Below the pieces are notes generated by a model. That model was not told the DNA's origin. It made no database searches and saw nothing but the letters and a program-made list of their open reading frames with translations. Shown one piece after another: positions 7,787 through 58,094 of a stretch of 64,000 nucleotides of DNA. The position numbers were made by a program, and so were the translations under genes. The stretch is from IMG/VR virus record IMGVR_UViG_3300021962_000021, positions 174,220 through 238,219 of that record, one strand, 5' to 3'. How positions within the stretch are numbered: position 1 is the first letter of the stretch; each line of letters begins with the position of its first letter.

Positions 7787-7794
7787 TATTTATA
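7787..7794 (+). promoter_or_regulatory. Putative late promoter motif TATTTATA
   Basis: Exact motif 3 nt before the ATG at 7798; recurs before many structural genes. Confidence 0.55.
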
Positions 7795-7797
7795 TGT

Positions 7798-10700
7798 ATG
7801 AATTTAATAAACGAAGTAGATAAACCGGAAATTAAGAAAACTGTTGTAATATTTTCAGGCAGATTTCAACCCTTTCATAGAGGACATTATGCAACATATG
7901 AGCACTTAGTGTCAAAATTTGGTGCTGCAAATGTTTACATAGGAACATCAAATGACCAATCTGGTCCAAAATCTCCGTTTGGATTTAAAGAAAAAAAGGA
8001 AATTGCAACAAAGATGTTTGGTATTCCTTCAAATAGATTTATACAAATTCGTAATCCATATCAACCGATTGAAATACTTAAAAAATTCGATGGACAAACT
8101 ACGCAATATATTGCAGCAGTAGGAGAGAAAGATGCAACAAGATTGCAAGGTAAATACTTTAAACCATATAAAGGCAAAGCTGGATATGGTTATGATGAAA
8201 TTGGTTATGTTTATCCGGTACCAGCAGAACAAAATCCAATAAGCGGAACGGATGTTAGAAATGCATTAGGTAGTGGGAATGATGAAAAAGCTAAAAAGTT
8301 TTTTCTAAAAGCATATCCAAAATTTGATAAAGAAATATATAAAATGATAACAGGAAAGTTAAATGAGAATTTTATAAAAGGTTATCCATCAAAAGAAGAT
8401 GTTAAAAAAATCCAAAAGAAAAATGATGATATTCGTTCAGTAGCAACTACGGATGATTCATATGTATATGACCCAATTGCAGAATTAATTGGTAGAGTGG
8501 CAGCAGAAGAGATGTTTAATGAATTTATTTTAGAATATTTGGATGAAGCACCTAATAAAGCATTAGACCAAGACATCACTTATACAAATAGTAAAGGCCA
8601 GCAAAAGAAAATTAAAGCCAGGGATGCATTAAGATTACCAAAAGACCATCCAGCTCACGTACAAGCAGCTAAAATAGCAGGACCGGATGATGCACCTGTG
8701 AATGAACCAAAAGCAAAAAAAGAACCAGGAAAAGCAGCTCAAAAAGCAGCAGAACCATCTCAGCCTGGTCAACCAACCAAAAAAGACCAAACCCAACAAG
8801 GAAAAATAGATAAAGAAAAATCATCTACCAGTGCACAATCTGGAAAAGAACAAGGTCCACCACCTGAACAAAAATTAAGTGGAACTGAATTAAAATCTTC
8901 AGCAGAAACTACACCTAAAGACCAAAAAGCCGAAAAAGTAAAACAAGCATTGGATGGTGCAAGAAAAGAGTTATCAAAAGAAGATAACCAAACTATTGAT
9001 AAAGTAAACAACCCACAATCTCCGGAAAGAAAAGGAATGATGGGTAACATTAAAAATGGTTTAAAAAAGATTGGTGATGGATTAGGACATTGGGCAAAGC
9101 ATAAGGCAGAAATGGTCGGTGGAACGGTTGATGCAGTAAAAGCATTAGCAAATGGACAGAAAATTGGTTCTACTAAAAATAAAGAAACAGGCGAATGGGA
9201 ATACTCCGATGAAAAAAGAAAAGAACAGATAAAACATATAAAACACTTTGCATTGGATGCTGGATTGTTAATAGGTTCTATGGCATTGGGTGGAGCTGGA
9301 GTTGCAGGAGTAAAAGCAGTGATGGCAGGTAAAGGAGCGGCCGCAGCGGGTTCTGCAGCATTACACGGCGCCGCTGGTGCATTTACACATGGTGCCGTTG
9401 GATTTGGTGCACATTTGGGTAAAGATATTGCAAAACACGCCGCATTGGAAACATTAGGATTGGGAGGAGTTAGCGCAGCAGGTGGTGGAGCAGCGTTATC
9501 CATAGCAACGGGTGGGATATTGGAAATGATTAATGAAGAAATTGATGATAACAACAAATTTATATCAAACTTTATGAGAAAGGTTGTCGAAAAAATGGAA
9601 ACATATCAACTTTCCGATGAACAACTACTCAAATCTATTGAAAATTATAAGAAAAATAAACCAAAACAAGATGCAGCCGATTTGTTAAGAGAAAACCTTT
9701 CAGAAACAAAACAACAATCAATTCAACATTTTGTAGAGTTTGCAACTAAAAGATTAAAATTACAAGAAACACCAAAAGTTAATTTAGTAGGTGGTGGAGA
9801 ATTTGCAGAAATAAAAACCAGTTTAGGGGGATTTGACCCTGAAACAAAAGAAATATATGTTGCAACCGAAGGAAGATTAACGGCGGATATTTTAAGAACT
9901 CTTGCACATGAAATGGTTCACAGAAAGCAAGATGAAATGGGATTGGTTAGAAATCCTATGAAAGATGGTGCAGATGGTTCTCCAATAGAAAACCAGGCGC
10001 ATGCAGTTGCGGGTATTCTAATGAGGGAATATGGTAGAATTAACAAACAAATATATCAAGAAGGAAAAAACTCACCGGCATATAAAGGACCGGAAGGATA
10101 CGATGATAGTTGCGATTGTTATCCAAATGAAGATATTAACTTAGATGTTGATAAGGGTGATACTTTATTGATGGGAAAGTTTAAAAACAAAAAAGTTACA
10201 GTAAAAGATATTGGTGTAGATGACCACGGAATGCCAACAATCAATGGTAAGCAAGCAACTACATTTCGTAAAGTAGATGAAATGGGCAGTAAGGATATTC
10301 ATTTTAAAAATATTTTAGATAAACTAAAAAACGGAAACTATACAACAAGAAAGAAGATAGCAATGGCAATTGTCGGTAAGTATAATGCAAGTAGAGATAC
10401 CATTGTAAGAGCTTTGCGTAATATGGGATATGATGATATTACAAATGTTGAAAAGCAAGCCGGAATAGAATTAAATGAAAATTTATTATTAGAAGGTGGT
10501 GCATATGGACACATGTCGCATCCATTTGATGATATGGATTTAACATTTGGTGACCTTAAAAATATAATTACAGGAGCACTGAATGGTGATTTGGGTGTAG
10601 TAAGAGAGAAAACCGATGGACAAGCATTAGCTATCAGTTGGAAGAATGGTAGATTGATTGCAGCAAGAAACAAAGGACATTTAGCAAATGCTGGAGCAAA

Positions 10701-12368: not shown

Positions 12369-13025
12369 ATGAAAAAATTATTGAATTTTAAAAACATTGC
12401 TATCGCAGCATTGATTATTTACATTTTATTACAATGGTTTAACCCAGGTGGAGTTATGCCAGGTGGAAGAACTATCAGAATTGATGGTAAAAAATATGAA
12501 GTATTAAAGCACACAATCGACACGGTTGAAGTAGAAAAATTAAAAGTAGTTACTAAAAAAGGAAAAGATATTGTACATGAAGTAATTGATGTGGATACTT
12601 TAGTTTTAAAAGAATTGGTAAATGTAGATTCTGCAGCAATTCTTAAAGATTATTTATCAAAAGTAATTTATAAAGATACATTATTCCTTCCTGATTCATT
12701 AGGAACTGTTTCATTAGTTGATACTATTACTAAAAACAGAATATTAGGTAGAACATTTGACGCAAAAGTAAAACAAAGAGAAATAAAAGAAACTCTTATT
12801 GTTAAAGAACCGGCTAAACACCAACTTTATTATGGTTTAAATGGTGGATTCAACAAAGCAGATGTGGTATCTCATGTAGGAGCAGGTTTAATGTTAAAAA
12901 CCAAAAAAGATAAATTATATCAATTTGGTGTAGGTGTTACAAATAGAACAGTTGATGGAACAAATGGTTCATTATCACCGTTTATAAATTTTGGAACATA
13001 TTGGAAAATTAAATTGAAAAAATAA
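12369..13025 (+). CDS. Membrane-anchored or exported hypothetical protein
   Basis: N-terminal hydrophobic helix IAIAALIIYILLQWF; beta-strand-like C-terminus. Confidence 0.6.
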   Translation: MKKLLNFKNIAIAALIIYILLQWFNPGGVMPGGRTIRIDGKKYEVLKHTIDTVEVEKLKVVTKKGKDIVHEVIDVDTLVLKELVNVDSAAILKDYLSKVIYKDTLFLPDSLGTVSLVDTITKNRILGRTFDAKVKQREIKETLIVKEPAKHQLYYGLNGGFNKADVVSHVGAGLMLKTKKDKLYQFGVGVTNRTVDGTNGSLSPFINFGTYWKIKLKK

Positions 13026-14635: not shown

Positions 14636-14640
14636 TCTTA

Positions 14641-14648
14641 TATTTATA
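14641..14648 (+). promoter_or_regulatory. Putative late promoter motif TATTTATA
   Basis: Exact motif in the short gap before 14666. Confidence 0.6.
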
Positions 14649-17528: not shown

Positions 17529-17546
17529 TAAACGAACAGAAAAGTA

Positions 17547-17554
17547 TATTTATA
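17547..17554 (+). promoter_or_regulatory. Putative late promoter motif TATTTATA
   Basis: Exact motif in the gap after the portal gene. Confidence 0.6.
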
Positions 17555-21689: not shown

Positions 21690-21869
21690 ATGTTGATTGT
21701 AAGTGTAAAAGGTGGTAACATAGAAGGTGCATTAAAAGAATATAAAAAGAAAGTTCAATCCGTAAAACAAATTGAACAATTAAGAGAAAGAAAAAATTAC
21801 ACCAAACCATCTGTAAAAAATAGGTTACAAAAAGAAGAAGCTAAAAGGAAAAATAAATTATTTTTTTAA
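21690..21869 (+). CDS. rpsU: Ribosomal protein bS21 (phage-encoded), 59 aa, not in ORF track
   Basis: MLIVSVKGGNIEGALKEYKKKVQSVKQIEQLRERKNYTKPSVKNRLQKEEAKRKNKLFF: NI..ALK.YK.K, LR.R and KPS motifs; MLI start as in Bacteroidota bS21. Confidence 0.9.
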   Translation: MLIVSVKGGNIEGALKEYKKKVQSVKQIEQLRERKNYTKPSVKNRLQKEEAKRKNKLFF

Positions 21870-21891
21870 TTTTCTTTAGTTTTCTATAAAA

Positions 21892-21899
21892 TATTTATA
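21892..21899 (+). promoter_or_regulatory. Putative late promoter motif TATTTATA
   Basis: Exact motif about 160 nt upstream of the scaffold gene. Confidence 0.6.
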
Positions 21900-22058
21900 T
21901 ATATTATCAAATATCCCATTATTATATGGGATTTATTATTACGACATAGTTGGTTAATGAATACCCTTCTCTTATAAGGTGTGACCGAACAACCAACATT
22001 ATTCTATTGGAGTTTCCTTTCGAAATAACTTCACGAACAAATTTAAGGAGAAAAACAA

Positions 22059-23288
22059 ATGGCAAATTCAAAATTATTGAAAGAAGCAATTGCTGATGCT
22101 AAGGCTGTTAAAGAAACTGCTCTTGCAAACGCAAAACTCGCTCTTGAAGAAGCATTTACTCCAAGACTTCAATCTATCTTATCTCAAAAGTTAAGAGCAG
22201 AAGCTGAAGCAGAAGAGAAAGATGCAGAAAAAGTAGACGAGGAATTGGATTCTACAGGCATTGGTTCTTCTACCTCTAATCCTAAATTAGACGCGCATAC
22301 TGAATTCGAAGCGGGTTCTACTAAAACAACATCAGGTGAGCCAGGTGCTCAAGTTGATGATTACAAAAAAGTAGCAGATATCAACGAAGAAGAAGGTATG
22401 GAAATGGGTGATGATGAAGCTGAAAAGCAAAATGAAATCGCTCAATTAAAAGCTAGATTAGCAGAATTAGAAGCAGGTGATGACCAAATGGCTGATGAAG
22501 AACCAAAAATGGAAGCTGATGATGAAATGGGTTCAGATGATGAATTCAATTTTGATTCAGAAGAAGGTGATGGTGAAGAATACGATGTTACCGGTAACGA
22601 AGAAGAAGATACCGAAGATGACATGGATTTAGAAGCTATCATCAGAGAATTAGAAGCACAATTAGGTGAAGAAGAAGATTCAGAAGAAGAAATGCCTGCA
22701 GATGATTCAGCAATGGCTGAAAATTTAGCAGACGGTTCAGAAGCTGGAACTGACAAAGGTGAAGACCCTAAAGTGGTTGTAACTAACGAAGAAGAAGAAA
22801 AAGAAGATGAAAAAGATGAAAAGAATGAAGTAATCGACTTAGAAGAAATTCTTCGTGAAATGGAAGCTGATATGAAAGGTGATGAAGATGAGAAAAAAGA
22901 CGAATCTTTAAAATCTGAATTAAACGAAGCTTACAAGACTATCAAATCTTTACAAAAAACTATTAACGAAGTAAACTTATTAAACGCTAAGTTATTATTC
23001 GCTAATAAATTATTCAGAGCACACAACATGACTAACGAACAAAAAGTTAAAGTGATTGAAACTTTGGATAGAACAAAATCAGTTAGAGAAGTTAAATTGG
23101 TTTACTCTACATTAGTAGAAAACTTCAAATATTCTTCAACTAACAAAGTTGCTAAAAAAGCAATCTCAGAAGGAATCGCTTCTAAAGCAGTTAAATCAAC
23201 TGCACCAAAAGCAGCAGCTAAGCAAGTAATTGCAGAATCTGCAGATTTCGCTGATAGATTTAAAAAATTAGCAGGAATTATTAAGTAA
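22059..23288 (+). CDS. Prohead scaffolding protein (gp22-like)
   Basis: Very acidic coiled-coil protein directly before the major capsid gene; C-terminal RFKKLAGI; strong AAGGAG SD. Confidence 0.85.
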   Translation: MANSKLLKEAIADAKAVKETALANAKLALEEAFTPRLQSILSQKLRAEAEAEEKDAEKVDEELDSTGIGSSTSNPKLDAHTEFEAGSTKTTSGEPGAQVDDYKKVADINEEEGMEMGDDEAEKQNEIAQLKARLAELEAGDDQMADEEPKMEADDEMGSDDEFNFDSEEGDGEEYDVTGNEEEDTEDDMDLEAIIRELEAQLGEEEDSEEEMPADDSAMAENLADGSEAGTDKGEDPKVVVTNEEEEKEDEKDEKNEVIDLEEILREMEADMKGDEDEKKDESLKSELNEAYKTIKSLQKTINEVNLLNAKLLFANKLFRAHNMTNEQKVKVIETLDRTKSVREVKLVYSTLVENFKYSSTNKVAKKAISEGIASKAVKSTAPKAAAKQVIAESADFADRFKKLAGIIK

Positions 23289-23318
23289 TTAACAAAAAAT
23301 AATTAAAAATTAATTAAA

Positions 23319-24935
23319 ATGGATTTAAAACAAATTATGTCAGGCAAAAACCCACAAAACGTAATGCTTGAGCAAACTAGAGGTTTGAAAGCAAAGTGGG
23401 AAAAAACCGGCTTATTAGAAGGAGTAGGTTCTGAAACTTCTAAGCACGGTATGGCTGTAATGCTTGAAAACCAAGCAAAGCAATTACTTGATGAAGCTAC
23501 TAGAACTGGTACTTCAGCAGGTTCAGAAGAGTGGGCAGGTGTAGCTCTTCCATTGGTAAGAAGAATCTTCGGTAGCATCGCTGCAAAAGAATTCGTTTCT
23601 GTTCAACCAATGAACTTACCTTCAGGTCTTATTTTCTATATGGATTTCAAATACGGTACAGCTACATCGGTAGGTAGACCAGCTTCTGGTTCTTCTATGT
23701 TCGGTAACGGTGGTACATTCGGTAAAGATTCTTTATCTCCAGCAGGTAACAAATTGGGTTCTACTCAAACTACTGAAGGCGGTCTTTACGGAGCAGGTAG
23801 ATTTGGATATACAATCAACGATGTAACTTCTGACGCTTTAACAGCAACAGTAACTACAGCTTCTTGGGCTGATGTTAATTTCGATGCTGATTACTCAGCT
23901 TCAGCAGCTGCAGGTGTTATCAGAAAAGTAAAAATTGGTTTACCATCTGATGCTGATTTCAACGCAGTAAGAGCTTTCTCTTTAACTGGTTCAGTTGACC
24001 AATTACCACAATTTACTTCAATTGATTCTTTAGGTTCTGCATCTTTCTTCGTATCAGCTTCTGTAGCAACAGTAGTACATGGTGCAGGTGGATACGGTAA
24101 TCCAAAAGTAAACTATTCTAAGCAACCAACTGATATCACAAGAGGTGATTTCGAAGATAGAGGTTCTGATTTAGCGATTCCTGAAATCGAATTAGAATTG
24201 AAGTCTGAACCAATCGTTGCTAAGACTAGAAAGTTAAAAGCAATCTGGACTCCAGAATTGGCACAAGACTTAAACGCTTACCATTCAGTAGATGCTGAAG
24301 CTGAATTAACTCAAATGTTATCTGAGTATATTTCTTTGGAAATCGACTTAGAAATCTTAGAGATGTTACAGCAAAACGCATTCACAACTGATTATTGGTC
24401 AGCAAGAGTTGGATACGATTACAATGCAGCAGCAGGTGCATTCCAAATCGACTCTAACGCAGCAGCAGCTTCTGCTTACACAAAGAGCACTTGGTATCAA
24501 ACTTTAGGTATTAAATTACAAAAAGTTTCTAACAAGATTCACCAATTAACTATGAGAGGTGGTGCAAACTTCTTAGTTGTATCTCCAAACGTAGCTACAA
24601 TTTTAGAATCTATGAACGGATTCTCTGCAAACCCAGGTAAAGATGCTTTACAATTTGCAGCAGGTGTTACTAATATCGGTTCAATCTCTAACAGATATGA
24701 TGTTTACAAAAACCCATACATGACTGAGAATGTAATCTTATTAGGTTTCAAAGGTTCTAACTTCTTCGAAACAGGTGCTGTATACGCTCCATATGTTCCG
24801 TTGATTATGACTCCATTGGTTTATGACCCAACTAACTTCACTCCAAGAAGAGGTGTTATGACTAGATACGCTAAGAAAATCGTAAGACCAGAGTTCTACG
24901 GTAAGATTGTCGTTGATGGTTTAAACACTTTATAA
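23319..24935 (+). CDS. gp23: Major capsid protein (T4 gp23-like)
   Basis: MLENQ, SVQPMNLPSGLIF, AKTRKLKA.WT.ELAQDL.A.H..DAEAEL, YAPYVPL, GVMTRY. Confidence 0.97.
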   Translation: MDLKQIMSGKNPQNVMLEQTRGLKAKWEKTGLLEGVGSETSKHGMAVMLENQAKQLLDEATRTGTSAGSEEWAGVALPLVRRIFGSIAAKEFVSVQPMNLPSGLIFYMDFKYGTATSVGRPASGSSMFGNGGTFGKDSLSPAGNKLGSTQTTEGGLYGAGRFGYTINDVTSDALTATVTTASWADVNFDADYSASAAAGVIRKVKIGLPSDADFNAVRAFSLTGSVDQLPQFTSIDSLGSASFFVSASVATVVHGAGGYGNPKVNYSKQPTDITRGDFEDRGSDLAIPEIELELKSEPIVAKTRKLKAIWTPELAQDLNAYHSVDAEAELTQMLSEYISLEIDLEILEMLQQNAFTTDYWSARVGYDYNAAAGAFQIDSNAAAASAYTKSTWYQTLGIKLQKVSNKIHQLTMRGGANFLVVSPNVATILESMNGFSANPGKDALQFAAGVTNIGSISNRYDVYKNPYMTENVILLGFKGSNFFETGAVYAPYVPLIMTPLVYDPTNFTPRRGVMTRYAKKIVRPEFYGKIVVDGLNTL

Positions 24936-24976
24936 TCTTTGAGTAGATTAGATAAGTAATAAACTTAACATAAAAG

Positions 24977-25010
24977 AAAAAGGGGAAGTAGAAATACTTT
25001 CCCTTTTTTT
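24977..25010 (+). terminator. Rho-independent terminator after the major capsid gene
   Basis: Stem AAGGGGAAGTA, GAAA loop, TACTTTCCCTT, then a T-tract. Confidence 0.85.
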
Positions 25011-25044
25011 ATTTAATATGGTAAATTCTCCATATATATGTGTA

Positions 25045-25917
25045 ATGGAAAAGCAAATTATATTTAAAGCGTATGAACTATACGAACATTCTATTGATGA
25101 ATCAAATCGTAGGTCAGATTCATATGTAATGGCAAAACAACCAGATGGTGAATTTGGTTATTTTAATATAAATCAATTTGCTTTAACTGGTTCAAATGTT
25201 TTTGTTGGAAACCAAACTATTACTGGTTCATTTTTAGTAAGTGGTTCAACAACCCAAATTGGTAACAATAGTTTATTAGGTAATACATTTTTAAGTGGTA
25301 ATATTGATGTAAGTGGTTCAACAAATTTCCATAATCATACAATTACAATGACAGGTTCGATGTATACGAGTGGTTCACAAACTATCACTGGTTCATTGGA
25401 TATTAAAGGAAATGTAAATGTAGCAAGTGGCTCTGAATTTTATTTAGCAGGAAACAAATTATTTAATTACGGGCAATTTAGTGATACAACTACACAAAGT
25501 GGTTCGGCAAATACTGCATATGCAAAAAAATTAAATACAATTGATTTTTCACACAATGTTGTAATAGAAAATGGTACAAGAATTAAAGTATTAAATACCG
25601 GAATATATAATTTACAATTTTCATCTCAATTATCAAATACGGCAAACACAAACATTACATTTGATATATGGTTAGCATATACTGGAAGTAATGTTGCAAA
25701 CTCAAATACACAAGTTGATGTAAATAAATCAGCAGGACAATTGGGTCGTTCAGTTGCAGCTTGGAATTTTATGTTACCAATTCAAGCAAATGATTATTTA
25801 GAGTTAATGTGGAGTTGTAATGCAGATACAGGTCAATTGGCATCGATGGGAACTCAAACAAATCCAATAAGACCGGCAATTCCATCGGTTATTGCAACAT
25901 TAACTCAAATAGGCTAA
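25045..25917 (+). CDS. Putative virion structural or decoration protein with TGS/SGS repeats
   Basis: Likely ATG at 25045 (the track starts at 25018); repeated xTGS/xSGS beta units; C-terminal TGIYNLQFSSQL...AAWNF...DYLELMW domain. Confidence 0.6.
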   Translation: MEKQIIFKAYELYEHSIDESNRRSDSYVMAKQPDGEFGYFNINQFALTGSNVFVGNQTITGSFLVSGSTTQIGNNSLLGNTFLSGNIDVSGSTNFHNHTITMTGSMYTSGSQTITGSLDIKGNVNVASGSEFYLAGNKLFNYGQFSDTTTQSGSANTAYAKKLNTIDFSHNVVIENGTRIKVLNTGIYNLQFSSQLSNTANTNITFDIWLAYTGSNVANSNTQVDVNKSAGQLGRSVAAWNFMLPIQANDYLELMWSCNADTGQLASMGTQTNPIRPAIPSVIATLTQIG

Positions 25918-25936
25918 CATTCTTTTTTTATTTGTA

Positions 25937-25944
25937 TATTTATA
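25937..25944 (+). promoter_or_regulatory. Putative late promoter motif TATTTATA
   Basis: Exact motif before 25974. Confidence 0.6.
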
Positions 25945-25973
25945 GTAGTAAAACTCTATAAATTTAATAAATA

Positions 25974-27170
25974 ATGTCATATAACAATTATTGGTCACCA
26001 TCCGTTTCAAGTTCATTTATATCTGGTAGTTCAACTCCATTTGGAATTTATGATGGTGATGCTCAATTTAGAAGTGATGCACCAAAAACAGCAACTTGGG
26101 TAGCAAAAAGATTGGGATATCCTATTGTTAATATAGAATTGGATAATGAGCAAATTTGGGCATGTTTTGAAGAAGCAACATCGGAATATTCTGCACAAGT
26201 AAATCAATTCAATTTAAGAAATAACTTAGATATCTTAAAAGGACAACCGAAGACGGCAAGAGATAATTATTCACAAACTCTTGTTGATGGTTCTTTCTTA
26301 CCTACTGTGGTTAGAATGTCACAACAATACGGAACATTAGCAGGTGTAGGCGGAAATACTTCAATCAAAAAAGCATATATAAATTTAACATCATCCGTTC
26401 AAATATACGATTTGATGACAACCGCATTTGATGCATCCACATCACAATCGTTTTCGACATTATTTACAGGAAGTTCTACAATTGATGTAACAAAAGTATT
26501 TCATGAAGCAGTTCCTGCGATTACTCGTTTTTTTGACCCATATTCGGTTGGTGCACAAGGAACTTTAAATTTAATTTCTGAATTAGGATTTGGTAATTAT
26601 TCACCTGCAGCACAATTCTTAATGATGCCTCTTTACGAAGATGTATTGAGAATGCAGCATATTGAATTCAATGACCATATAAGAAAATCGGCACATACAT
26701 TTAATATAGTTGATAATAAATTAGAAATATTTCCTGTTCCAACACAAGATTCTCCTGGAAAAATCTATTTTGAATATATGAGTAGAGATGAGTTTGAACA
26801 TAATTCGCAAACTGTTCAAGCGGATTCACTTTCTGATTATTCGGATGTTCCATATGATTTTATTCAATATTCAAATATAAATGATGTTGGTAAGCAATGG
26901 ATTAGAAAATATACACTAGCGTTATCTAAGGAATTATTAGGAGCAATTAGAGAAAAATATAATTCAGTTCCAATTCCAGATGGTGAAGTTAGTTTAGATG
27001 GTGCAGCATTGAGGTCAGAAGCACAGGTTGAAAAAGATGCGTTAATCACACAATTGAGAGAAAACTTAGAAGAATTGAGTAGAAAGAATGTGATGGAAAA
27101 CAAAGCACATGAAGCAGACCATCAGCAAGAAATGTTAAGAAAAGTTCCATTAAAATTATATGTAGGATAA
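25974..27170 (+). CDS. Neck protein (gp13-like head-tail adaptor)
   Basis: RLGYPIVNIELDNEQI, WIRKYTLALSKELLG.IR.KY, V.LDG..L..EA. Confidence 0.8.
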   Translation: MSYNNYWSPSVSSSFISGSSTPFGIYDGDAQFRSDAPKTATWVAKRLGYPIVNIELDNEQIWACFEEATSEYSAQVNQFNLRNNLDILKGQPKTARDNYSQTLVDGSFLPTVVRMSQQYGTLAGVGGNTSIKKAYINLTSSVQIYDLMTTAFDASTSQSFSTLFTGSSTIDVTKVFHEAVPAITRFFDPYSVGAQGTLNLISELGFGNYSPAAQFLMMPLYEDVLRMQHIEFNDHIRKSAHTFNIVDNKLEIFPVPTQDSPGKIYFEYMSRDEFEHNSQTVQADSLSDYSDVPYDFIQYSNINDVGKQWIRKYTLALSKELLGAIREKYNSVPIPDGEVSLDGAALRSEAQVEKDALITQLRENLEELSRKNVMENKAHEADHQQEMLRKVPLKLYVG

Positions 27171-27171
27171 T

Positions 27172-27642
27172 ATGCCAAAATTTTTAGTAGGTAGAGATAT
27201 AGATTTTTTTAGAAATGTAGCTAGGGAATTAGTAGAAACCGTAGTTCAAAACACTTGCGTTTTATATAAAATAAATTTAAATGAAACAAAAGTAAACATA
27301 TATGGAGAAGCTATGAACAAAACTTGGCACAGAGGTATTGAATTATATTGTTTAATCAATAAAGAACCAGAAACTGTATCATACGAAGGTTTTGGTCCTG
27401 AAACAAATCAAAATATAGAATTTCGTTTTGATAGAGAACAATGTAGAGATGCAAATGCATATCCTGAAATTGGTGATGTTATTTACTTTAATGATTCTTA
27501 TTTTGAAATAGATAATACAAATGAAATTCAATTTGTGGGTGGATTACCAGGAACAGATAACGAAAGAAGAAACTGGAGTATTATTTGTTCTACATTTATG
27601 GTATCTAAATCTAATCTTAATATAGAAGAAAGAATAAATTAA
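27172..27642 (+). CDS. Neck/head-closure protein (gp14-like)
   Basis: Follows the gp13-like gene; NIYGEA, PEIGDVI, FEI motifs. Confidence 0.65.
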   Translation: MPKFLVGRDIDFFRNVARELVETVVQNTCVLYKINLNETKVNIYGEAMNKTWHRGIELYCLINKEPETVSYEGFGPETNQNIEFRFDREQCRDANAYPEIGDVIYFNDSYFEIDNTNEIQFVGGLPGTDNERRNWSIICSTFMVSKSNLNIEERIN

Positions 27643-29603: not shown

Positions 29604-29619
29604 ATGTTAGATAAAAAGA

Positions 29620-29627
29620 TATTTATA
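29620..29627 (+). promoter_or_regulatory. Putative late promoter motif TATTTATA
   Basis: Exact motif 4 nt before the ATG at 29632. Confidence 0.55.
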
Positions 29628-29955: not shown

Positions 29956-29993
29956 TATATTTTAATTTTTAATATTGTTAGTTAAAAAAATGA

Positions 29994-30001
29994 TATTTAT
30001 A
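29994..30001 (+). promoter_or_regulatory. Putative late promoter motif TATTTATA
   Basis: Exact motif before 30039. Confidence 0.6.
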
Positions 30002-32072: not shown

Positions 32073-32093
32073 AATTTTTAATTATATTTAAAG

Positions 32094-32117
32094 ACCCTTC
32101 TTCGGAAGGGTTTTTTA
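32094..32117 (+). terminator. Rho-independent terminator with C(UUCG)G tetraloop
   Basis: ACCCTTC-TTCG-GAAGGGT followed by a T-tract. Confidence 0.9.
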
Positions 32118-32188
32118 TTTTCAAAAAGTATATTTATTGAAGTAGTATATACTACCTTTTTGTTATATAACCACAGAATAGACTATAT

Positions 32189-32707: not shown

Positions 32708-32710
32708 CGA

Positions 32711-32718
32711 TATTTATA
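32711..32718 (+). promoter_or_regulatory. Putative late promoter motif TATTTATA
   Basis: Exact motif before 32739. Confidence 0.6.
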
Positions 32719-36653: not shown

Positions 36654-36654
36654 A

Positions 36655-36662
36655 TATTTATA
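36655..36662 (+). promoter_or_regulatory. Putative late promoter motif TATTTATA
   Basis: Exact motif before 36710. Confidence 0.6.
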
Positions 36663-40649: not shown

Positions 40650-41648
40650 ATGTATGATGTTTATTACACCACCGCTGGAGGCCCTTGGTTCAACAGCGGT
40701 GCTGATATATGGGTAACGAAATGGATAGAAGAAGTGGCACCACATTTAGAGGTTAAACCACTTCTACTTTTCCATAGAAAGAAACCTGATAATTACGAAG
40801 AATTTCCAATCAACATTGACCATATTTGGGAAACAAATGAATTGGAAATTGATAAAATATTAAAGAGTGCAAGAAAAATTCACATACTGCACGGACATTA
40901 TACACCAACTACCGCAATTCATAATAATTTAGATAAAATAGATTCAATTGTTTTCCATAATTTGACAAAAGTATCAATGGTGGGTCAAATGAATAAAGAT
41001 GAATATTTGCATTGGTATGGTAATTGGGAATGGGAAACGGAATTAATAAATAAAATAAAAAATAAAATTTGGGTAGGATTATATAATTTTCCATATAAAA
41101 CGGATAATTTACATCAAATACCAAATTATTATGAATTTATTGAAAACAAAGAACTATTAAATTCTAACAAAATAGGATTTGCAGCAAGAGCAGAAGGTAG
41201 AAAAAATGTAGAATATTTGGATGAATTAGAATCTATTATTTTTACAAATTCAGAAACCTTTAACAAATATTATAGAAAAAAATATGGATACGGATTCGGA
41301 AAATCAAAAATTTATAAATTTGATTACAAACATAAGGAAAGGTTCTACGGACTTGATTGGGGAATATCTCATTCTTGCTTTGAATTTGAACCATTTGGAT
41401 ACGGAATTTTTGAAGCAGTGGATTGGGGAAAGCTTCCGATATTACATGAAAAGTGGCACGTTCCACTTGATTATAAATACAAAGCGACTGACAAGGAATC
41501 ATTTAAGCAGACCTACCAAACGATTTGTGAGGATGATTACGAAACCCGTAAAAAAGAATTTGAAAAACTTAAAAGTTGGATGATACAACACTTTTCAAAT
41601 AAAGAAGTGTGGAAAGAAAAACTTTTAGATATTTATAATGGATTATAA
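40650..41648 (+). CDS. Glycosyltransferase (GT-B fold, GT4-like)
   Basis: SGADIW N-terminal loop, FAARAEGRKN, EPFGYGIFEAVDWGKLPI (E-x7-E signature). Confidence 0.75.
   Translation: MYDVYYTTAGGPWFNSGADIWVTKWIEEVAPHLEVKPLLLFHRKKPDNYEEFPINIDHIWETNELEIDKILKSARKIHILHGHYTPTTAIHNNLDKIDSIVFHNLTKVSMVGQMNKDEYLHWYGNWEWETELINKIKNKIWVGLYNFPYKTDNLHQIPNYYEFIENKELLNSNKIGFAARAEGRKNVEYLDELESIIFTNSETFNKYYRKKYGYGFGKSKIYKFDYKHKERFYGLDWGISHSCFEFEPFGYGIFEAVDWGKLPILHEKWHVPLDYKYKATDKESFKQTYQTICEDDYETRKKEFEKLKSWMIQHFSNKEVWKEKLLDIYNGL
41630..41637 (+). promoter_or_regulatory. Putative late promoter motif TATTTATA
   Basis: Exact motif in the 3' end of the glycosyltransferase gene, before 41659. Confidence 0.5.
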
Positions 41649-43419: not shown

Positions 43420-43443
43420 TTGTTGTTTTGAAATAAAAAATTA

Positions 43444-43451
43444 TATTTATA
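43444..43451 (+). promoter_or_regulatory. Putative late promoter motif TATTTATA
   Basis: Exact motif before the sheath gene. Confidence 0.65.
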
Positions 43452-45732: not shown

Positions 45733-45745
45733 TTTGAAAAGTAAA

Positions 45746-45753
45746 TATTTATA
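45746..45753 (+). promoter_or_regulatory. Putative late promoter motif TATTTATA
   Basis: Exact motif before the tube gene. Confidence 0.65.
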
Positions 45754-46268: not shown

Positions 46269-46290
46269 TCTATAAAAAACAAATAAAAAG

Positions 46291-46324
46291 AAGGGAGAAT
46301 CAAAAGTTCTCCCTTTTATTTTTT
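46291..46324 (+). terminator. Rho-independent terminator after the tube gene
   Basis: AAGGGAGAA-TCAAAAG-TTCTCCCTT followed by a T-rich tail. Confidence 0.85.
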
Positions 46325-46365
46325 CAAAAAGAGAATATATATAATAAACAAAGTTATATATTAAT

Positions 46366-47392: not shown

Positions 47393-47415
47393 TTTCCATT
47401 TTATATTATAAGTTA

Positions 47416-47423
47416 TATTTATA
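47416..47423 (+). promoter_or_regulatory. Putative late promoter motif TATTTATA
   Basis: Exact motif before 47439. Confidence 0.6.
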
Positions 47424-47438: not shown

Positions 47439-47738
47439 ATGTCTAATAGAAAATATTTGTATGAAGTATCATTTGTTAAAAGATTAATAAATGGATTCTT
47501 AGGAGCAAAATCACAAGAAAAAGAAGATAGTTTTTTAGATGTTCTAAAAAAGCATGATGATGAATTGGCGGCAGTATTTGGTGACTTTAATGATAGATTA
47601 GACAGATATAATAAAGATGTTAGTTCTAGACTTGGGAAGAATGTAAAAGCTATGGATGTAAAAGATACACAAATATACAAAGCTTTAAATCGTTACATGG
47701 AAGAATCTATTAATAGAAGAATTAATAAGAAGAAATAA
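47439..47738 (+). CDS. Hypothetical protein
   Basis: 99-aa ORF after a late motif, directly before the tape measure gene. Confidence 0.6.
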   Translation: MSNRKYLYEVSFVKRLINGFLGAKSQEKEDSFLDVLKKHDDELAAVFGDFNDRLDRYNKDVSSRLGKNVKAMDVKDTQIYKALNRYMEESINRRINKKK

Positions 47739-51438: not shown

Positions 51439-51463
51439 TATTATCACAATTTTTCTATTAGAA

Positions 51464-51471
51464 TATTTATA
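51464..51471 (+). promoter_or_regulatory. Putative late promoter motif TATTTATA inside an inverted repeat
   Basis: Exact motif flanked by TTTTCTATT (51451) and AATAGAAAA (51475). Confidence 0.6.
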
Positions 51472-52886: not shown

Positions 52887-53186
52887 ATGGCAAATAGATA
52901 CATTTATACAAATATAAAAGAAACTAAAGGTAAAAAAAGATATATGGAATCTACTATATATCCAAAAGTTTTTCCTGATGATAACGATATATACATAATT
53001 ACCGAACAAGGTGATAGATTGGATTTATTGGCGGACAAATATTATAAAAACCCATCTATGTGGTGGATTATAGCAACTGCTAATAATATAAATGATGCAA
53101 ATTTTTATGTTGAGGCCGGCATACAATTGAGAATACCGTCAAATGTTGCAAAGATTTTAAACGATTTACAAAAAATAAATAAATAA
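52887..53186 (+). CDS. LysM-like baseplate protein (gp53/tail X-like)
   Basis: GDRLDLLADKYYKNPSMWWIIATANN...GIQLRIP. Confidence 0.85.
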   Translation: MANRYIYTNIKETKGKKRYMESTIYPKVFPDDNDIYIITEQGDRLDLLADKYYKNPSMWWIIATANNINDANFYVEAGIQLRIPSNVAKILNDLQKINK

Positions 53187-53191
53187 GTTAT

Positions 53192-55546
53192 ATGGGATTT
53201 CCGTATTTAGCACCACTAAAACCTTGGATAAAGGATATTTTAGAAGAAAGAGAATTAAATAAAAATTTAAAACATATTTCTTCACCGTTTATTGTTTTAA
53301 CAAGTGGTGCAAAAGTAGTAAAATCAAAACCCTATAAAAGTGCCGAAGAAAAAGAGAATGCACTTAAAGAAATACTACAAACCGATACGGCAGCAATGTA
53401 TCATGGGTGTATTATAACAAACCAATCTGACCCAAAAATGTTATATGAAACGAATGAAACATCAATAGGATATGATTTTAAAGGTAAAAAAATTATCGTA
53501 GAAGGTGAAACAAATAGAAGAGTTTCACCACCAATTATAGAGGGATTGGATATAGATACCGATGGTTCGAATAATACTTTAAAATCGGCAAAACTTACTA
53601 TCAAATGTTTTACTTTGAAACAACTTGAAATGTTTGAAGTATTTTTTCTAAAAGCAGGAATGAATTTATTGGTAGAATATGGTGATAATTCGTTAGATAG
53701 AAGAACGGATATAAAACAAAAAAATGAATCTGAAAAAATTCCTGTGTTTGATAGAATACAAAGAAGTGGAAAAATTTCAGATGGAGATTATTTTAATAGA
53801 ATCCAAGATGCATTAATTGATAAAAAAGATTATAAGAGTTTTACAGAAGGATTTTCTGATTATTTTAGAGCAACAACGGATTCTTTATCTGTATATTTAG
53901 GTAAACTTCGTAGAACTTTGGGAACATATGATTTGGTGGCGGGGAAAGTTACGGATTTTAACTTTGAAGTAGATGAATCCGGAATATACACCGTTAATTT
54001 AACCATATCACAGGGAAATCAAATGACATTGGCAATACCGCTTAACCAAAAAAGTGGACAAAATTCAAATACATATTCACCACCACCGCCTGGTACAACG
54101 GTATATGAACAATATTTGGAAACCATATCAGTTGATTTAAACTTACCAGAATTAAAACCAACAATGGCGCCAGAAGCTAAATGGAAAAATCATCTTTTTA
54201 ATTTTGGTAAACTTAATGAAAAACAATCTGACACGGCAACATCAAATAAACCATATATTTCATTGCATTTTATAATTGAAATATTGATGAATTATATTAT
54301 CAATACCAATGGAAATATTGATACAAAAACATTTAGATTTGATATACCCGAGTATTACAAAGATGAAACTCTAAAACAACCAATACAATGTATTCCTATA
54401 TTTTATCACAAAAATATAATTTCTTCGAATGAAGATGTTGTATTTCCGAACAAAACAATGGCTAGCATTTCCGTTGTTAAATCGGATAAAACGCAAATTT
54501 CATTTATTACAGATACTACAATAGATGGAAGTATTGGTAGTGGCAACAGTAAAATAGAATTGAGGTTAATGGATGGAACAACTCCTGTAAATGATTTATG
54601 GACACCTGATGGAATAAAAATACCAAAAGTGGATAAAAATAATACGGATATGGTTTTTGGTAATGCTGCAAATATTTTTCTAAACTATATTAGAGTTGTA
54701 GAAATGTGGCAAAAATCAGGAACAAGAAAAGAATTTTTGTTTAAGGTATTAAATATGATAAATGATGCGGGATATGGATTTTATACTTTAATTTATGGAA
54801 ATATAAAAGATGGTTCATTGGGAGATAATGCAACTATATTAGATGCAAGGGGTGGAACATTTGGTGCAGTTGCAAAGAGCGATATTTATAGATTTAAACC
54901 GGGTACAATTAAATCAAATGTAAGAAACTTTTCTTTTAATTTTGAATTAAGTGATTTGGTGGCAGGAAGGACGGTTTTTAATGCACAAACAACTCTGATG
55001 GCCGCAGCAAAGAAAAAAACAAAAGAAGAAGTTAAAAAATTAGAACTTCCCGTAGAAGCTTATAAAAGTATAGATTTTTCTTTATATACAAACGCAGATG
55101 GATATTATTCTATAAATCAAATTGATTATTTATCTATTAATAAAACTTGGAAAGAGATAACGGCAAAACCAACAGGCCAAGTAGACCCTAACGCTGAAAA
55201 GCAAGATAATGAGGCTCAAAACTTATCTGAAATTATAAAATCAAAATCAACAAAATTCAAAAAAGAAAATGGTAATATAACTTTGGTATATAAGGATAAT
55301 GATTTTTTAAGAGCTAAAATGAATGCTAGTATTAAACCAAAAAGCACATTGGCACCAATTGATATTACATTGGAAATAGATGGGTTATCTGGATTAAGTT
55401 GTGGTGAATATTTTGAAGTAGATGGTGTTCCAGAAATTTATAATCAAACGGGGGTATTTCAAATAACAAATACAAAACACAATATTTCATCTGAAGGTTG
55501 GAAAACAACAATAGAAGCTGGATATAGAATTGTAAAAAAAGAGTAA
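53192..55546 (+). CDS. Putative baseplate hub protein
   Basis: C-terminal LEIDGLSGL..GEYF.VDGVP..Y...GVFQITN.KHNI...GWKTTIEA typical of hub proteins; baseplate context. Confidence 0.6.
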   Translation: MGFPYLAPLKPWIKDILEERELNKNLKHISSPFIVLTSGAKVVKSKPYKSAEEKENALKEILQTDTAAMYHGCIITNQSDPKMLYETNETSIGYDFKGKKIIVEGETNRRVSPPIIEGLDIDTDGSNNTLKSAKLTIKCFTLKQLEMFEVFFLKAGMNLLVEYGDNSLDRRTDIKQKNESEKIPVFDRIQRSGKISDGDYFNRIQDALIDKKDYKSFTEGFSDYFRATTDSLSVYLGKLRRTLGTYDLVAGKVTDFNFEVDESGIYTVNLTISQGNQMTLAIPLNQKSGQNSNTYSPPPPGTTVYEQYLETISVDLNLPELKPTMAPEAKWKNHLFNFGKLNEKQSDTATSNKPYISLHFIIEILMNYIINTNGNIDTKTFRFDIPEYYKDETLKQPIQCIPIFYHKNIISSNEDVVFPNKTMASISVVKSDKTQISFITDTTIDGSIGSGNSKIELRLMDGTTPVNDLWTPDGIKIPKVDKNNTDMVFGNAANIFLNYIRVVEMWQKSGTRKEFLFKVLNMINDAGYGFYTLIYGNIKDGSLGDNATILDARGGTFGAVAKSDIYRFKPGTIKSNVRNFSFNFELSDLVAGRTVFNAQTTLMAAAKKKTKEEVKKLELPVEAYKSIDFSLYTNADGYYSINQIDYLSINKTWKEITAKPTGQVDPNAEKQDNEAQNLSEIIKSKSTKFKKENGNITLVYKDNDFLRAKMNASIKPKSTLAPIDITLEIDGLSGLSCGEYFEVDGVPEIYNQTGVFQITNTKHNISSEGWKTTIEAGYRIVKKE

Positions 55547-55938: not shown

Positions 55939-55970
55939 TTTGGAAAAATAAAAATAAAATCGTATATTTA
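55939..55970 (+). promoter_or_regulatory. Putative Bacteroidota-type sigma-A promoter
   Basis: TTTG at 55939, 20-nt spacer, TATATTTA at 55963. Confidence 0.65.
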
Positions 55971-56764: not shown

Positions 56765-56795
56765 TTTGTAATCCCAAATATTTTTAGTATATTGG
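56765..56795 (+). promoter_or_regulatory. Putative Bacteroidota-type sigma-A promoter
   Basis: TTTG at 56765, 19-nt spacer, TATATTGG at 56788. Confidence 0.55.
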
Positions 56796-56801
56796 TAGGG
56801 T

Positions 56802-58079
56802 ATGATGAATCTGATAGAAGATAAATCTACCCTACTTTCTTTTTTAAAGGGTGGAACAAAATTAAAATTATTTATACCCGTATGGAGTTCTCACAAAGCA
56901 CATCCAATGGGTACTCGTATATCGTTTGTATATTACCGAACTGAAGAAGGTGATGGTATTATTAATTTTAATCATATAGATGCAAATAAAGTTAAAAACT
57001 TTTTTATTCCAGAATTGATTAGTGCTGATACTGTTGTTTTGGATAGTAGGTATGTAAGCAAATGTGGATACGATTTTGAGTGGTTATATTTTGAGGAATA
57101 CGGAAAACCATTCCTATTCAATGAGTTCGCACAATCGCTTTATAAGGGGTATAGAAATGATTTTAAAGAGTTAAATGATTGTATACCCTTAATGAAGTGG
57201 TATGAGTTGTTAAAAACCTTACCAAATCTGACACTTAAAACGGAAGTTAATAAAAGATATTCATCAGCAATCCAAACATTGGGAAGGTTGGAAGGGGCTG
57301 GGGTAAAAGTCGATAGAGAAAAATTTATTGATAGTTTTAATTATCCCGAGCAATACCTCCACAAAAACGATAGGGTATACACACAATACAATCCATACAC
57401 AATAACGGGTAGACCTTCCAATAGACATATGGGTATAAACTACTCTGCCCTTAACAAATCCGATGGTAGTAGAGAGTGTTTCACAAGTAGACATCCCGAA
57501 GGAACTTTATTACAATTCGATTACGAATCATATCACATTAGATTGATTGCCGGATTGATTGGATATAAGTTTCCGGAGGATATCACCGCTCACCAACACC
57601 TTGCAAACCTTTACGGTCTACCATATGAGGAAGCAAAGTTATTGACTTTCCGATATCTTTATGGGGGATTAGATGATGAAGCAAGAAAGATTGATTTCTT
57701 TCAAAAAGTAGATGAATACATCAAATCGGTTTACCAAAAGTTCATAATCACCGGCCGGCTAACGACACCTCTCTATAAGAGGGAAATTCATTTCGGAAGA
57801 ATCGAAGGTGCAACTGAACAAAAGGTATTTTCTTACCTATTACAAGCGTTGGAAACTGAAGTGAATTACATCAAAATTAAAGAGGTATTAGATTATTTAG
57901 ACCAAACAGGTAAAATGAGTAAGATGGTTTTATACACTTATGATGCGTTTTTAATTGATACTCACCCCGTCGAAAGAGAAAAAGTAATGGAGAATGTGAA
58001 AAATATAATGGAGAAGGGTGGGTTCCCTGTCCGAAGTTACGAAGGAACTAATTACAACAATTTAGAGGTTATTAGTTAA
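56802..58079 (+). CDS. Small family A DNA polymerase-like protein
   Basis: TGRPS, motif A FDYESYHIRL, motif B AKLLTFRYLYG, LQ, motif C YTYDAFL. Confidence 0.85.
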   Translation: MMNLIEDKSTLLSFLKGGTKLKLFIPVWSSHKAHPMGTRISFVYYRTEEGDGIINFNHIDANKVKNFFIPELISADTVVLDSRYVSKCGYDFEWLYFEEYGKPFLFNEFAQSLYKGYRNDFKELNDCIPLMKWYELLKTLPNLTLKTEVNKRYSSAIQTLGRLEGAGVKVDREKFIDSFNYPEQYLHKNDRVYTQYNPYTITGRPSNRHMGINYSALNKSDGSRECFTSRHPEGTLLQFDYESYHIRLIAGLIGYKFPEDITAHQHLANLYGLPYEEAKLLTFRYLYGGLDDEARKIDFFQKVDEYIKSVYQKFIITGRLTTPLYKREIHFGRIEGATEQKVFSYLLQALETEVNYIKIKEVLDYLDQTGKMSKMVLYTYDAFLIDTHPVEREKVMENVKNIMEKGGFPVRSYEGTNYNNLEVIS

Positions 58080-58086
58080 AAAATTA

Positions 58087-58094
58087 TATTTATA
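58087..58094 (+). promoter_or_regulatory. Putative late promoter motif TATTTATA
   Basis: Exact motif before 58130. Confidence 0.55.

What the first reader, a model, noticed from the sequence alone, without database searches (positions are those of the whole stretch)
7787..58094. Late-gene motif TATTTATA is the reverse complement of the T4 late promoter TATAAATA
Exact ATATTTATA on the sense strand precedes genes at 7787, 14641, 17547, 21892, 25937, 29620, 29994, 32711, 36655, 41630, 43444, 45746, 47416, 51464 and 58087, with variants at 32131 and 46336. Almost all of these are structural genes. T4 gp55 reads TATAAATA on the sense strand. Inference: a late sigma factor with changed specificity. 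Some copies lie only 3-4 nt from the ATG, implying near-leaderless mRNAs.
Basis: partly seen in the sequence, partly recalled or inferred. Interest (0 to 1): 0.65.

Follow-up and report, generated by a model that had tools for sequence, protein, structure and literature searches.

The report
Late-gene promoter motif of Bacteroidota jumbo phage
A strictly conserved 9-base signal (ATATTTATA) sits just upstream of the virion genes of a 238-kb phage of Bacteroidota. It is most likely the late promoter, read by a distant relative of the T4 late sigma factor gp55 that the same phage encodes; its being the reverse complement of the T4 late promoter is probably a coincidence.

Summary
ATATTTATA occurs 17 times in the window, always on the gene strand. 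In the whole 238-kb phage genome it occurs 30 times on that strand and 3 on the other. Twenty-five copies lie in the 8.7% of DNA that is intergenic, against about 2 expected. It is the top intergenic 9-mer and usually lies 15-40 nt before an ATG, mostly of virion genes. It is invariant before the sheath gene in 53 of 53 distinct relatives and recurs in Flavobacterium phage immuto and phage Mel-JY01.

A second, mutually exclusive class (TTTG-N20-TATATTT[A/G]) matches the Bacteroidota sigma-A -33/-7 promoter. In the window it precedes replication genes. So the late motif is best read as a host-type -7 core with a TA extension and no -33 box, a parallel to T4 TATAAATA versus E. coli TATAAT rather than its reverse complement.

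The genome encodes a 230-aa protein whose N-terminal domain is a remote gp55 homologue (hhalign 90.7%; structure Z 10.3 to 7d7c_F). No gp33, gp45 or phage RNA polymerase was detected.

Conserved 3-4 nt spacing to some ATGs implies leaderless mRNAs and a start site closer to the motif than in T4. Start sites and the sigma-motif link remain untested. I rate it a new variant of a known kind.

The parts
7786..7794 (+). ATATTTATA, 3 nt before the ATG at 7798 (1294 aa, N-terminal cytidylyltransferase-like domain). This implies a leaderless or nearly leaderless mRNA.
   Evidence: The HxGH-type motif starts at residue 17 and the next Met is residue 73, so the ATG at 7798 is the real start.
14640..14648 (+). 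ATATTTATA, 17 nt before the ATG at 14666 (358 aa). The portal gene follows at 15792.
17546..17554 (+). ATATTTATA, about 20 nt before the 290-aa gene that opens the head module (prohead protease at 20035).
21891..21899 (+). ATATTTATA, 159 nt before the ATG at 22059 (409 aa), which is followed by the major capsid gene 23319-24935. It lies just after the S21 gene.
   Evidence: RNA-library contigs cover 21884-25011 only.
24975..25010 (+). Intrinsic terminator (16-pair stem plus T run) behind the capsid gene. It coincides with the end of RNA-library coverage.
25936..25944 (+). ATATTTATA, 29 nt before the ATG at 25974 (398 aa, head-tail adaptor-like).
29619..29627 (+). ATATTTATA, 4 nt before the ATG at 29632 (107 aa, conserved MAN... 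N-terminus). The same 3-4 nt spacing is seen in 11 of 24 distinct relatives.
29993..30001 (+). ATATTTATA, 37 nt before the ATG at 30039 (677 aa).
32090..32138 (+). Intrinsic terminator (32090-32115) followed by the variant ATATTTATT (32130-32138), 50 nt before gene 32189 (fibre-like N-terminus).
32710..32718 (+). ATATTTATA, 20 nt before the tail-fibre gene 32739 (1304 aa).
36654..36662 (+). ATATTTATA, 47 nt before the tail-fibre gene 36710 (1311 aa).
41629..41637 (+). ATATTTATA, 21 nt before the ATG at 41659 (586 aa virion protein). It overlaps the last codons of ORF 40650-41648.
43443..43451 (+). ATATTTATA, 37 nt before the tail-sheath gene 43489. TATATTTATA is invariant in 53 of 53 distinct relatives, and a GTTTTG block 11 nt upstream is also invariant (52 sequences).
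45745..45753 (+). ATATTTATA, 26 nt before the tail-tube gene 45780.
46289..46343 (+). Intrinsic terminator (46289-46317) followed by the variant ATATATATA (46335-46343), 22 nt before the baseplate-hub gene 46366. Relatives hold ATATATATA, ATACTTATA, ATATTAATA or ATATTTATA at this spot.
47415..47423 (+). ATATTTATA, 15 nt before the ATG at 47439 (99 aa), followed by a 1228-aa gene.
51463..51471 (+). ATATTTATA, 17 nt before the ATG at 51489 (462 aa). A baseplate-wedge-like gene follows at 52887.
58086..58094 (+). ATATTTATA, 35 nt before the ATG at 58130 (711 aa, function unknown).
7559..7567 (+). Intragenic copy of ATATTTATA inside ORF 7102-7644.
54882..54890 (+). Intragenic copy of ATATTTATA inside ORF 53192-55546.
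55939..55970 (+). Host-type promoter TTTG-N20-TATATTTA (Bacteroidota sigma-A -33/-7), 16 nt before gene 55987. A DNA-polymerase-like gene follows at 56802. This is the contrast class, not the late motif.
62328..62359 (+). Host-type promoter TTTG-N20-TATATTTA, upstream of the ssDNA-binding protein gene 62458-63306. This is the contrast class.

Best explanation
ATATTTATA is the core of this phage's late promoters. It acts on the sense strand in the -10/-7 region. It needs no -33 box. Transcription starts within about 3-5 nt downstream, giving short A-rich leaders and, for a few genes, leaderless mRNAs. The most likely reader is host core RNA polymerase carrying the phage's own 230-aa gp55-like sigma (G000:C1:128403-129095). 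That gene sits behind a host-type promoter. The cascade would then be: host sigma-A promoters (TTTG-N20-TATATTT[A/G]) drive early and replication genes and the sigma gene, and the sigma then drives the virion genes. Shown: enrichment, strand bias, position before genes, conservation in relatives, two exclusive promoter classes, and a gp55-like fold. Inferred: promoter activity, late timing, start-site position, and the pairing of this sigma with this motif.
For: Enrichment and orientation.
Position: most copies lie 15-40 nt before an ATG, in 172 distinct sites of relatives.
Conservation: the motif is invariant before the sheath gene in 53 of 53 relatives while the flanks vary. Strand counts are 298 to 12 in 80 related loci, with 230 copies in the 3.6% of DNA that is intergenic. 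Five near-complete relatives show 29:3, 36:4, 31:2, 29:5 and 17:3. The same core precedes terminase, portal and sheath genes in Flavobacterium phage immuto and phage Mel-JY01.
Two classes: 23 intergenic sites fit TTTG-N17-21-TAnnTTT, 19 of them with a spacer of exactly 20, and none is followed by TA. None of the 25 late sites has TTTG at that spacing. In the window the host-type class precedes an ssDNA-binding protein gene and a DNA-polymerase-like gene, and the late motif precedes head, tail and fibre genes.
Transcription units: terminators lie just before motif copies or at unit ends. Contigs from four river RNA libraries cover 21884-25011, from the motif to the terminator. There is no coverage at 21700-21883 and next to none at 25012-27200.
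Sigma: weak Sigma70_r2 hit. The family profile's best PDB hit is T4 gp55. hhalign against a gp55 alignment gives 90.7% and E 1.3e-6 over 104 columns. The AF2 model has pLDDT 93.5. Its top structural match is gp55 chain 7d7c_F (Z 10.3, rmsd 2.8 A over 110 residues), and nearly all other rows are sigma factors. The sigma gene lies in an operon behind a TTGGTA...TATATTA promoter. The sigma is present in immuto, Mel-JY01 and 4 of 5 near-complete relatives.
No T7-like or multisubunit phage RNA polymerase was detected.
Against: No start site, timing or strand-specific RNA data exist. The RNA evidence comes from assembled contigs of related strains at 90% identity or more, so gaps may reflect divergence rather than silence.
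The sigma-motif pairing is untested. One 95%-complete relative has the motif (31:2) but no detectable sigma. The 484-kb relative LR756508 has a 44%-identical sigma but no enrichment of the motif.
About half the sites carry a full host-like TATATTTA, so modified host sigma-A remains possible.
gp55 HMMs (phrog_234, phrog_12791) and Pfam do not recognise the protein at their thresholds.
Some sites precede non-structural genes.
Confidence: 0.6

Rival explanations
1. The motif is a late promoter, but host sigma-A holoenzyme reads it as a strong or extended -7 box. A phage activator or sigma-appropriating factor replaces the missing -33 contact, as MotA/AsiA do at T4 middle promoters or Mu C and P2 Ogr do at late ones. 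The gp55-like protein would then have another target.
For: The late core overlaps the host-type -7 box: TATATTTA is present in 14 of the 25 intergenic sites and in 52 of 52 sheath promoters. The A and T that canonical sigma-70-type factors flip out (-11 and -7) are both present if the core is placed at -12..-5, the position reported for Flavobacterium (PMC9723704). One relative has the motif without a detectable sigma.
Against: The 3' TA and the near-absence of single-mismatch variants show that more than the host box is specified: 25 exact intergenic copies against a handful of true one-mismatch sites. Host-type boxes in this genome are never followed by TA. A conserved gp55-like sigma is encoded and has no other obvious role. 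No activator candidate was identified.
Confidence: 0.2
2. The motif works at the RNA level, as a 5'-UTR stability, processing or translation signal, or it binds a DNA protein unrelated to initiation.
For: It lies in A-rich leaders of a host group that lacks Shine-Dalgarno pairing (PMC9723704). The distance to the ATG peaks at 15-40 nt.
Against: Spacing to the ATG ranges from 3 to 159 nt. Copies sit directly behind intrinsic terminators. RNA-library coverage begins in the bin that holds the motif and is absent upstream. The sequence is a -10/-7-like box that shares its core with the evident promoters.
Confidence: 0.06
3. The functional element is the T4-type TATAAATA on the minus strand, read by a T4-like gp55 and driving antisense or leftward transcription.
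For: A gp55 homologue is present.
Against: Essentially all genes lie on the + strand. The motif lies a short, fixed-sense distance before + strand ATGs in every relative. There is no RNA-library coverage to the left of the 21891 copy but there is coverage to its right. The gp55 residues that form the -9 pocket (N13, H95) are replaced in this family.
Confidence: 0.02

Closest known systems
T4 late promoter TATAAATA, read by gp55 with gp33 and the gp45 clamp (Geiduschek and Kassavetis, PMC2988020; Shi et al., PMC7892883)
   Same: It is a short, almost invariant AT-rich box in the -10 region with no upstream -35/-33 box. It lies before virion genes of a phage with T4-like head and tail genes. It resembles the host's own -10/-7 box. 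A gp55-like sigma-2 domain is encoded (hhalign 90.7%; Z 10.3 to 7d7c_F). The equivalents of gp55 Y97 and T99 are kept.
   Different: The sequence is ATATTTATA, not TATAAATA (6 of 8 positions match in either of two registers). The start site must lie 5 nt or less after the motif, against 6 nt after T4's last A. No gp33 or gp45 homologue was detected by HMM. The sigma is 230 aa with an extra C-terminal helical domain. The host polymerase is the Bacteroidota type. The gp55 -9 pocket residues N13 and H95 are replaced.
Bacteroidota sigma-A promoter, -33 TTTG / -7 TAnnTTTG (Flavobacterium psychrophilum start-site map, PMC9723704)
   Same: The core TATATTTA fits TAnnTTT. The leaders are A-rich and short, matching the reported median of 24 nt. 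The phage's own early promoters fit this consensus with a 20-nt spacer.
   Different: No late site has TTTG at the -33 spacing (0 of 25). The T of the TA dinucleotide is not required (T in 14 of the 25 intergenic sites, and C at the adjoining position in immuto). The final G is replaced by A. An invariant TA is added at the 3' side.
Phage-encoded sigma cascades such as Bacillus phage SPO1 gp28 and gp33/34 (from my own knowledge; SPO1 sigma use is mentioned in PMC13401047)
   Same: Host-sigma promoters express a phage sigma that redirects host core polymerase to a distinct promoter class.
   Different: SPO1 sigmas recognise two-part (-35 and -10) promoters. Here only one box is conserved across sites.

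Membership tests
T4-type late promoter system | 8-bp TATAAATA on the non-template strand | tested here: not met
   The sense-strand motif is (A)TATTTATA. TATAAATAT occurs on + only 3 times genome-wide. The same-orientation match is 6 of 8.
T4-type late promoter system | No -35/-33 element | tested here: met
   None of the 25 sites has TTTG at the host spacing, and the matrix shows no conserved block shared by all sites.
T4-type late promoter system | Located before late (virion) genes | tested here: met
   The motif precedes portal-region, capsid, adaptor, fibre, sheath, tube and baseplate genes. Timing itself was not measured.
T4-type late promoter system | gp55 homologue encoded | tested here: met
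   The homology is remote: profile hit to 7d7c_F at E 0.097, hhalign 90.7% and E 1.3e-6, VIA Z 10.3 with rmsd 2.8 A over 110 residues. The gp55 PHROG HMMs miss it.
T4-type late promoter system | gp33 co-activator and gp45 sliding-clamp activator | tested here: inconclusive
   phrog_254 (gp33) and phrog_223 (gp45) find nothing in the genome at E up to 10. Only sequence HMMs were used, so divergent or bacterial-type clamps were not excluded.
T4-type late promoter system | Start site 6 nt after the last A (motif at -13..-6; PMC7892883) | tested here: inconclusive
   There are no start-site data. Conserved 3-4 nt spacing to true ATGs argues for a start 5 nt or less after the motif, which is not T4 geometry.
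Bacteroidota sigma-A promoter | -33 TTTG about 19-20 nt upstream of the -7 box | tested here: not met
   None of the 25 late sites has it, while 19 other intergenic sites have it with exactly 20 nt.
Bacteroidota sigma-A promoter | -7 box TAnnTTTG | tested here: inconclusive
   The core ATATTTA is invariant. The leading T is present in 14 of the 25 intergenic sites. The final G is always A.
Sigma-70 family (the 230-aa protein) | Sigma region-2 fold and sequence signature | tested here: met
   Nearly all of the top structural matches are sigma factors. The Pfam Sigma70_r2 hit scores only 12.5 bits against a 24-bit cut-off.
Sigma-70 family (the 230-aa protein) | Region-4 helix-turn-helix domain | tested here: inconclusive
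   The C-terminal domain modelled alone (pLDDT 90) matches sigma region 4 chains only at Z 4.9-5.9, among unrelated helical domains. The profile hits TrpR-like helix-turn-helix proteins at E 0.15.

The most novel reading that the evidence does not exclude
A very large, unannotated family of gp55-related phage sigma factors, with more than 1,300 clusters at 50% identity, carries an extra C-terminal DNA-binding-like domain. On Bacteroidota RNA polymerase it drives late transcription without a T4-type gp33/clamp activator. It does so from a 9-bp element that evolved from the host -7 box, and it produces leaderless late mRNAs. This would be a second, independent solution to 'late promoter = host -10 box without an upstream box' in the wider T4-like lineage.
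Probability: 0.35. Interest if true: 0.65.

Novelty: new variant of a known kind. Interest (0 to 1): 0.5.

Why it matters
Phages of this clade are abundant in fresh, estuarine and marine waters. The sigma alone has more than 5,000 clusters at 90% identity, and DNA from 14 runs (10 studies) holds the window's capsid region. Yet their gene regulation is undescribed: full-text searches found no paper on this motif or on late promoters of Flavobacterium phages.

A defined late promoter and a candidate sigma give three things:
- a rule for annotating late transcription units in hundreds of metagenomic genomes;
- a testable case of how the gp55 lineage adapted to the unusual Bacteroidota polymerase and its -7/-33 promoters;
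- compact orthogonal promoter and sigma parts for genetic work in Bacteroidota, where standard tools fail.

Tried and rejected
- Literature searches for the motif, for Mel-JY01 and for Flavobacterium phage late promoters found nothing relevant.
- Direct detection of gp55, gp33 and gp45 failed: the PHROG HMMs and a T4 gp55 protein search gave no hits, and BLASTP of the candidate against gp55 was not significant. Homology appeared only with profiles and structure.
- Pfam and PHROGs do not annotate the sigma.
PF00940 gave one sub-threshold 12.8-bit hit in a 1693-aa protein that has no other support. I judged this unlikely.
- A shared upstream element for the late sites was not found at a fixed position. 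The invariant GTTTTG before the sheath gene is specific to that gene.
- Motif avoidance inside genes is weak. Against synonymous-codon shuffles the motif is at 5 against 7.9 (p about 0.14) and its reverse complement at 2 against 5.7 (p about 0.03).
- The C-terminal domain fold search was inconclusive.
- In the distant relative LR756508 the motif is not enriched and its gene calls look poor. An AACTTAAA word is over-represented there, but I did not pursue it.
- RNA evidence comes only from Logan contigs, which cannot give start sites, strand or expression level (5,501 letters laid, within the operators' limit).
- No complex prediction was run.
Full report
**What the window is.** The window is the last 64 kb of a single-contig 238,219-bp virus record (31% G+C). 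Nearly every gene lies on the + strand. The window carries the following genes:
- large terminase at 13025
- portal at 15792
- prohead protease at 20035
- major capsid protein at 23319
- adaptor-like gene at 25974
- tail fibres at 32739 and 36710
- sheath at 43489
- tube at 45780
- baseplate hub at 46366
- baseplate wedge-like gene at 52887

The nearest cultured relatives are Flavobacterium phage vB_FspM_immuto, phage Mel-JY01 (recorded host Microcystis) and a 484-kb uncultured phage. Their head genes are annotated as T4-like gp20 and gp23.

- ATATTTATA occurs 17 times in the window, all on + (5.2 expected). Two intragenic copies, at 7559 and 54882, were missed.
- Genome-wide there are 30 copies on + and 3 on -.
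- Twenty-five of the 30 lie in the 8.7% of DNA that is not + strand coding. Markov models of order 1 to 4 trained on that same intergenic DNA expect 1-4 (Poisson P about 2e-18 at order 3).
- An unbiased count ranks it first among intergenic 9-mers, while its reverse complement occurs once there.
- The flanks are merely A/T-rich; the information sits in the nine bases.
- True one-mismatch variants are few.

**Conservation.**
- In 53 of 53 distinct upstream regions of sheath orthologues (66-100% protein identity), TATTTATA is exact about 37 nt before the ATG while the flanks drift. All but one read TATATTTATA.
- In the anchored alignment of 52 of these, TATATTTATA is nearly invariant (one sequence differs at its first base), and a GTTTTG block 11 nt upstream is fully invariant at this one promoter.
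- Over 80 related loci (872 kb) the 9-mer is 298 on the gene strand against 12 on the other. Of these, 230 lie in the 3.6% of DNA that is intergenic, mostly 15-40 nt before the next ATG.
- Five near-complete relatives give strand ratios of 29:3, 36:4, 31:2, 29:5 and 17:3.
- In immuto the form [A/C]TATTTATA precedes the terminase, portal and sheath genes.
- In Mel-JY01, ATATTTATA precedes the gene after the terminase (portal position), the gene after the capsid gene, and the sheath and tube genes.
- The 484-kb relative shows no enrichment.
- At the hub promoter, relatives carry ATATATATA, ATACTTATA, ATATTAATA or ATATTTATA. The outer ATA...ATA is therefore fixed and the middle T's tolerate single changes.

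**A second promoter class explains the core.** Listing all intergenic ATATTTA showed a different family: TTTG(G), 20 nt, then TATATTT[A/G].
- Of 23 intergenic matches, 19 have a spacer of exactly 20, and none is followed by TA.
- This is the Bacteroidota sigma-A promoter (-33 TTTG, -7 TAnnTTTG). In Flavobacterium psychrophilum the -7 box lies at -12 to -5 (PMC9723704).
- It fixes the host phylum. E. coli-type promoters are not enriched.
- None of the 25 late sites has TTTG at that spacing.
- In the window the two host-type promoters precede an ssDNA-binding protein gene (62458) and a unit with a DNA-polymerase-like gene (56802). The 9-mer precedes virion genes.

The late motif therefore looks like the host-type -7 core, extended by TA and stripped of its -33 partner. 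This is the relation that T4's TATAAATA has to the E. coli TATAAT box. That TATTTATA is the reverse complement of TATAAATA seems incidental. The two words match at 6 of 8 positions in the same orientation in two registers, and ATATTTATA reads the same backwards.

**A gp55-like sigma is encoded.**
- A weak Sigma70_r2 hit led to a 230-aa ORF at G000:C1:128403-129095.
- It belongs to a very large unannotated family: 5,146 clusters at 90% identity and 1,332 representatives at 50%.
- A profile of 69 members has T4 gp55 (7d7c_F) as its best hit in the PDB, at E 0.097 over nearly all of gp55.
- hhalign against an alignment of 34 gp55 homologues gives 90.7% probability and E 1.3e-6 over 104 columns.
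- The AF2 model (pLDDT 93.5) matches sigma factors almost exclusively. The top hit is gp55 at Z 10.3, rmsd 2.8 A over 110 residues.
- In the T4 complex, gp55 inserts A-12, A-9 and A-8 into pockets lined by residues N13, L54, R57, F86, H95, Y97 and T99 (PMC7892883). In this family Y97 and T99 are kept as Y92 and S/T94, while N13 and H95 are replaced by T/G and F/Y. This fits a retained adenine pocket and an altered one, but the meaning depends on a register that is not known.
- The C-terminal 105 residues form a separate helical domain. Its resemblance to sigma region 4 is within noise.
- The gene lies in an operon behind a TTGGTA...TATATTA promoter, as expected for a factor made before late genes.
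- It is present in immuto, Mel-JY01 and LR756508 and in 4 of 5 near-complete relatives.
- No gp33, gp45, T7-like or multisubunit polymerase was detected.

**Geometry and leaderless mRNAs.**
- The ATG at 7798 is 3 nt after the motif. It must be the true start, because the nucleotidyltransferase motif begins at residue 17.
- The ATG at 29632 is 4 nt after the motif and opens a conserved MAN... N-terminus.
- In 11 of 24 distinct relatives of that gene the motif again lies 3-4 nt before the ATG, with different spacer bases.
- If the motif is their promoter, transcription starts 5 nt or less after it, at or next to the A of the ATG. That excludes T4 geometry, where the start is 6 nt after the last A. 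It fits the closer-set Bacteroidota box.
- Leaderless mRNAs exist in flavobacteria, at 5.5% of mRNAs.

**RNA evidence.** Only assembled contigs were available. In four river metatranscriptomes from four studies, contigs at 90% identity or more cover 21884-25011. That is the stretch from the bin holding the 21891 motif to the strong terminator at 24975-25010. There is none at 21700-21883 and next to none at 25012-27200. This fits a rightward unit from motif to terminator and argues against leftward transcription. However, contigs show no ends or strand, and the silent flanks may simply be more divergent in those strains.

**Verdict.** The motif is a real, conserved, sense-strand promoter-like element of late genes (confidence about 0.85). 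The gp55-like sigma reading it is the best hypothesis (about 0.6). Host sigma-A plus an unknown phage factor is the main rival (about 0.2). I class it as a new variant of a known kind of system.

Noticed in passing
window 21690-21869 (+): A 59-aa ORF encodes ribosomal protein S21 (Pfam PF01165, E 2.4e-13). It lies just before the late motif and the scaffold and capsid genes. Mel-JY01 has an annotated RpsU at the matching place.
   Followed up: partly
window 43424-43436 (about 11 nt upstream of the sheath motif): A GTTTTG block is invariant in 52 of 52 distinct relatives at the sheath promoter only. Its 11-nt spacing does not fit a host -33 box. It might be a gene-specific upstream contact or regulator site.
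   Followed up: partly
G000:C1:126007-126042, 123445-123508 and 124151-124227 (outside the window): There are host-like promoters with a weaker -7 box (TTTGGTA ... TATATTA/G) ahead of the operon that holds a peptide-deformylase-like gene and the sigma gene. They may form a distinct middle class.
   Followed up: no
window 21913-21932 (+): A 7-pair hairpin lies 14 nt after the 21891 motif, inside an unusually long 159-nt leader that ends in an AAGGAG-like stretch before the ATG at 22059. That is odd for a host group that lacks Shine-Dalgarno use.
   Followed up: no
L004 (LR756508.1 150170-193504): The 484-kb relative keeps a 44%-identical sigma but shows no TATTTATA enrichment. The word AACTTAAA is over-represented between its genes (8 intergenic against 3 coding). 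Many long gaps between ORFs suggest poor gene calls or another genetic code.
   Followed up: partly
G000:C1:154741-159822 and 140407-145767 (outside the window): Two giant ORFs (1693 and 1786 aa) have no family assignment. The first gives a sub-threshold 12.8-bit hit to the T7-type RNA polymerase Pfam model. The second lies 10 nt behind a late motif.
   Followed up: partly
whole genome, intergenic DNA (outside the window; none in the window): The words GGTTCGAATCC and TTCGAATCC recur about 10 times between genes. That is the signature of a tRNA gene cluster elsewhere in the genome (around 59-66 kb, where ORFs are sparse).
   Followed up: no
G003 (IMG/VR record behind L061): This 180-kb relative, estimated 95% complete, has the motif at 31:2 but no detectable homologue of the 230-aa sigma.
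   Followed up: no
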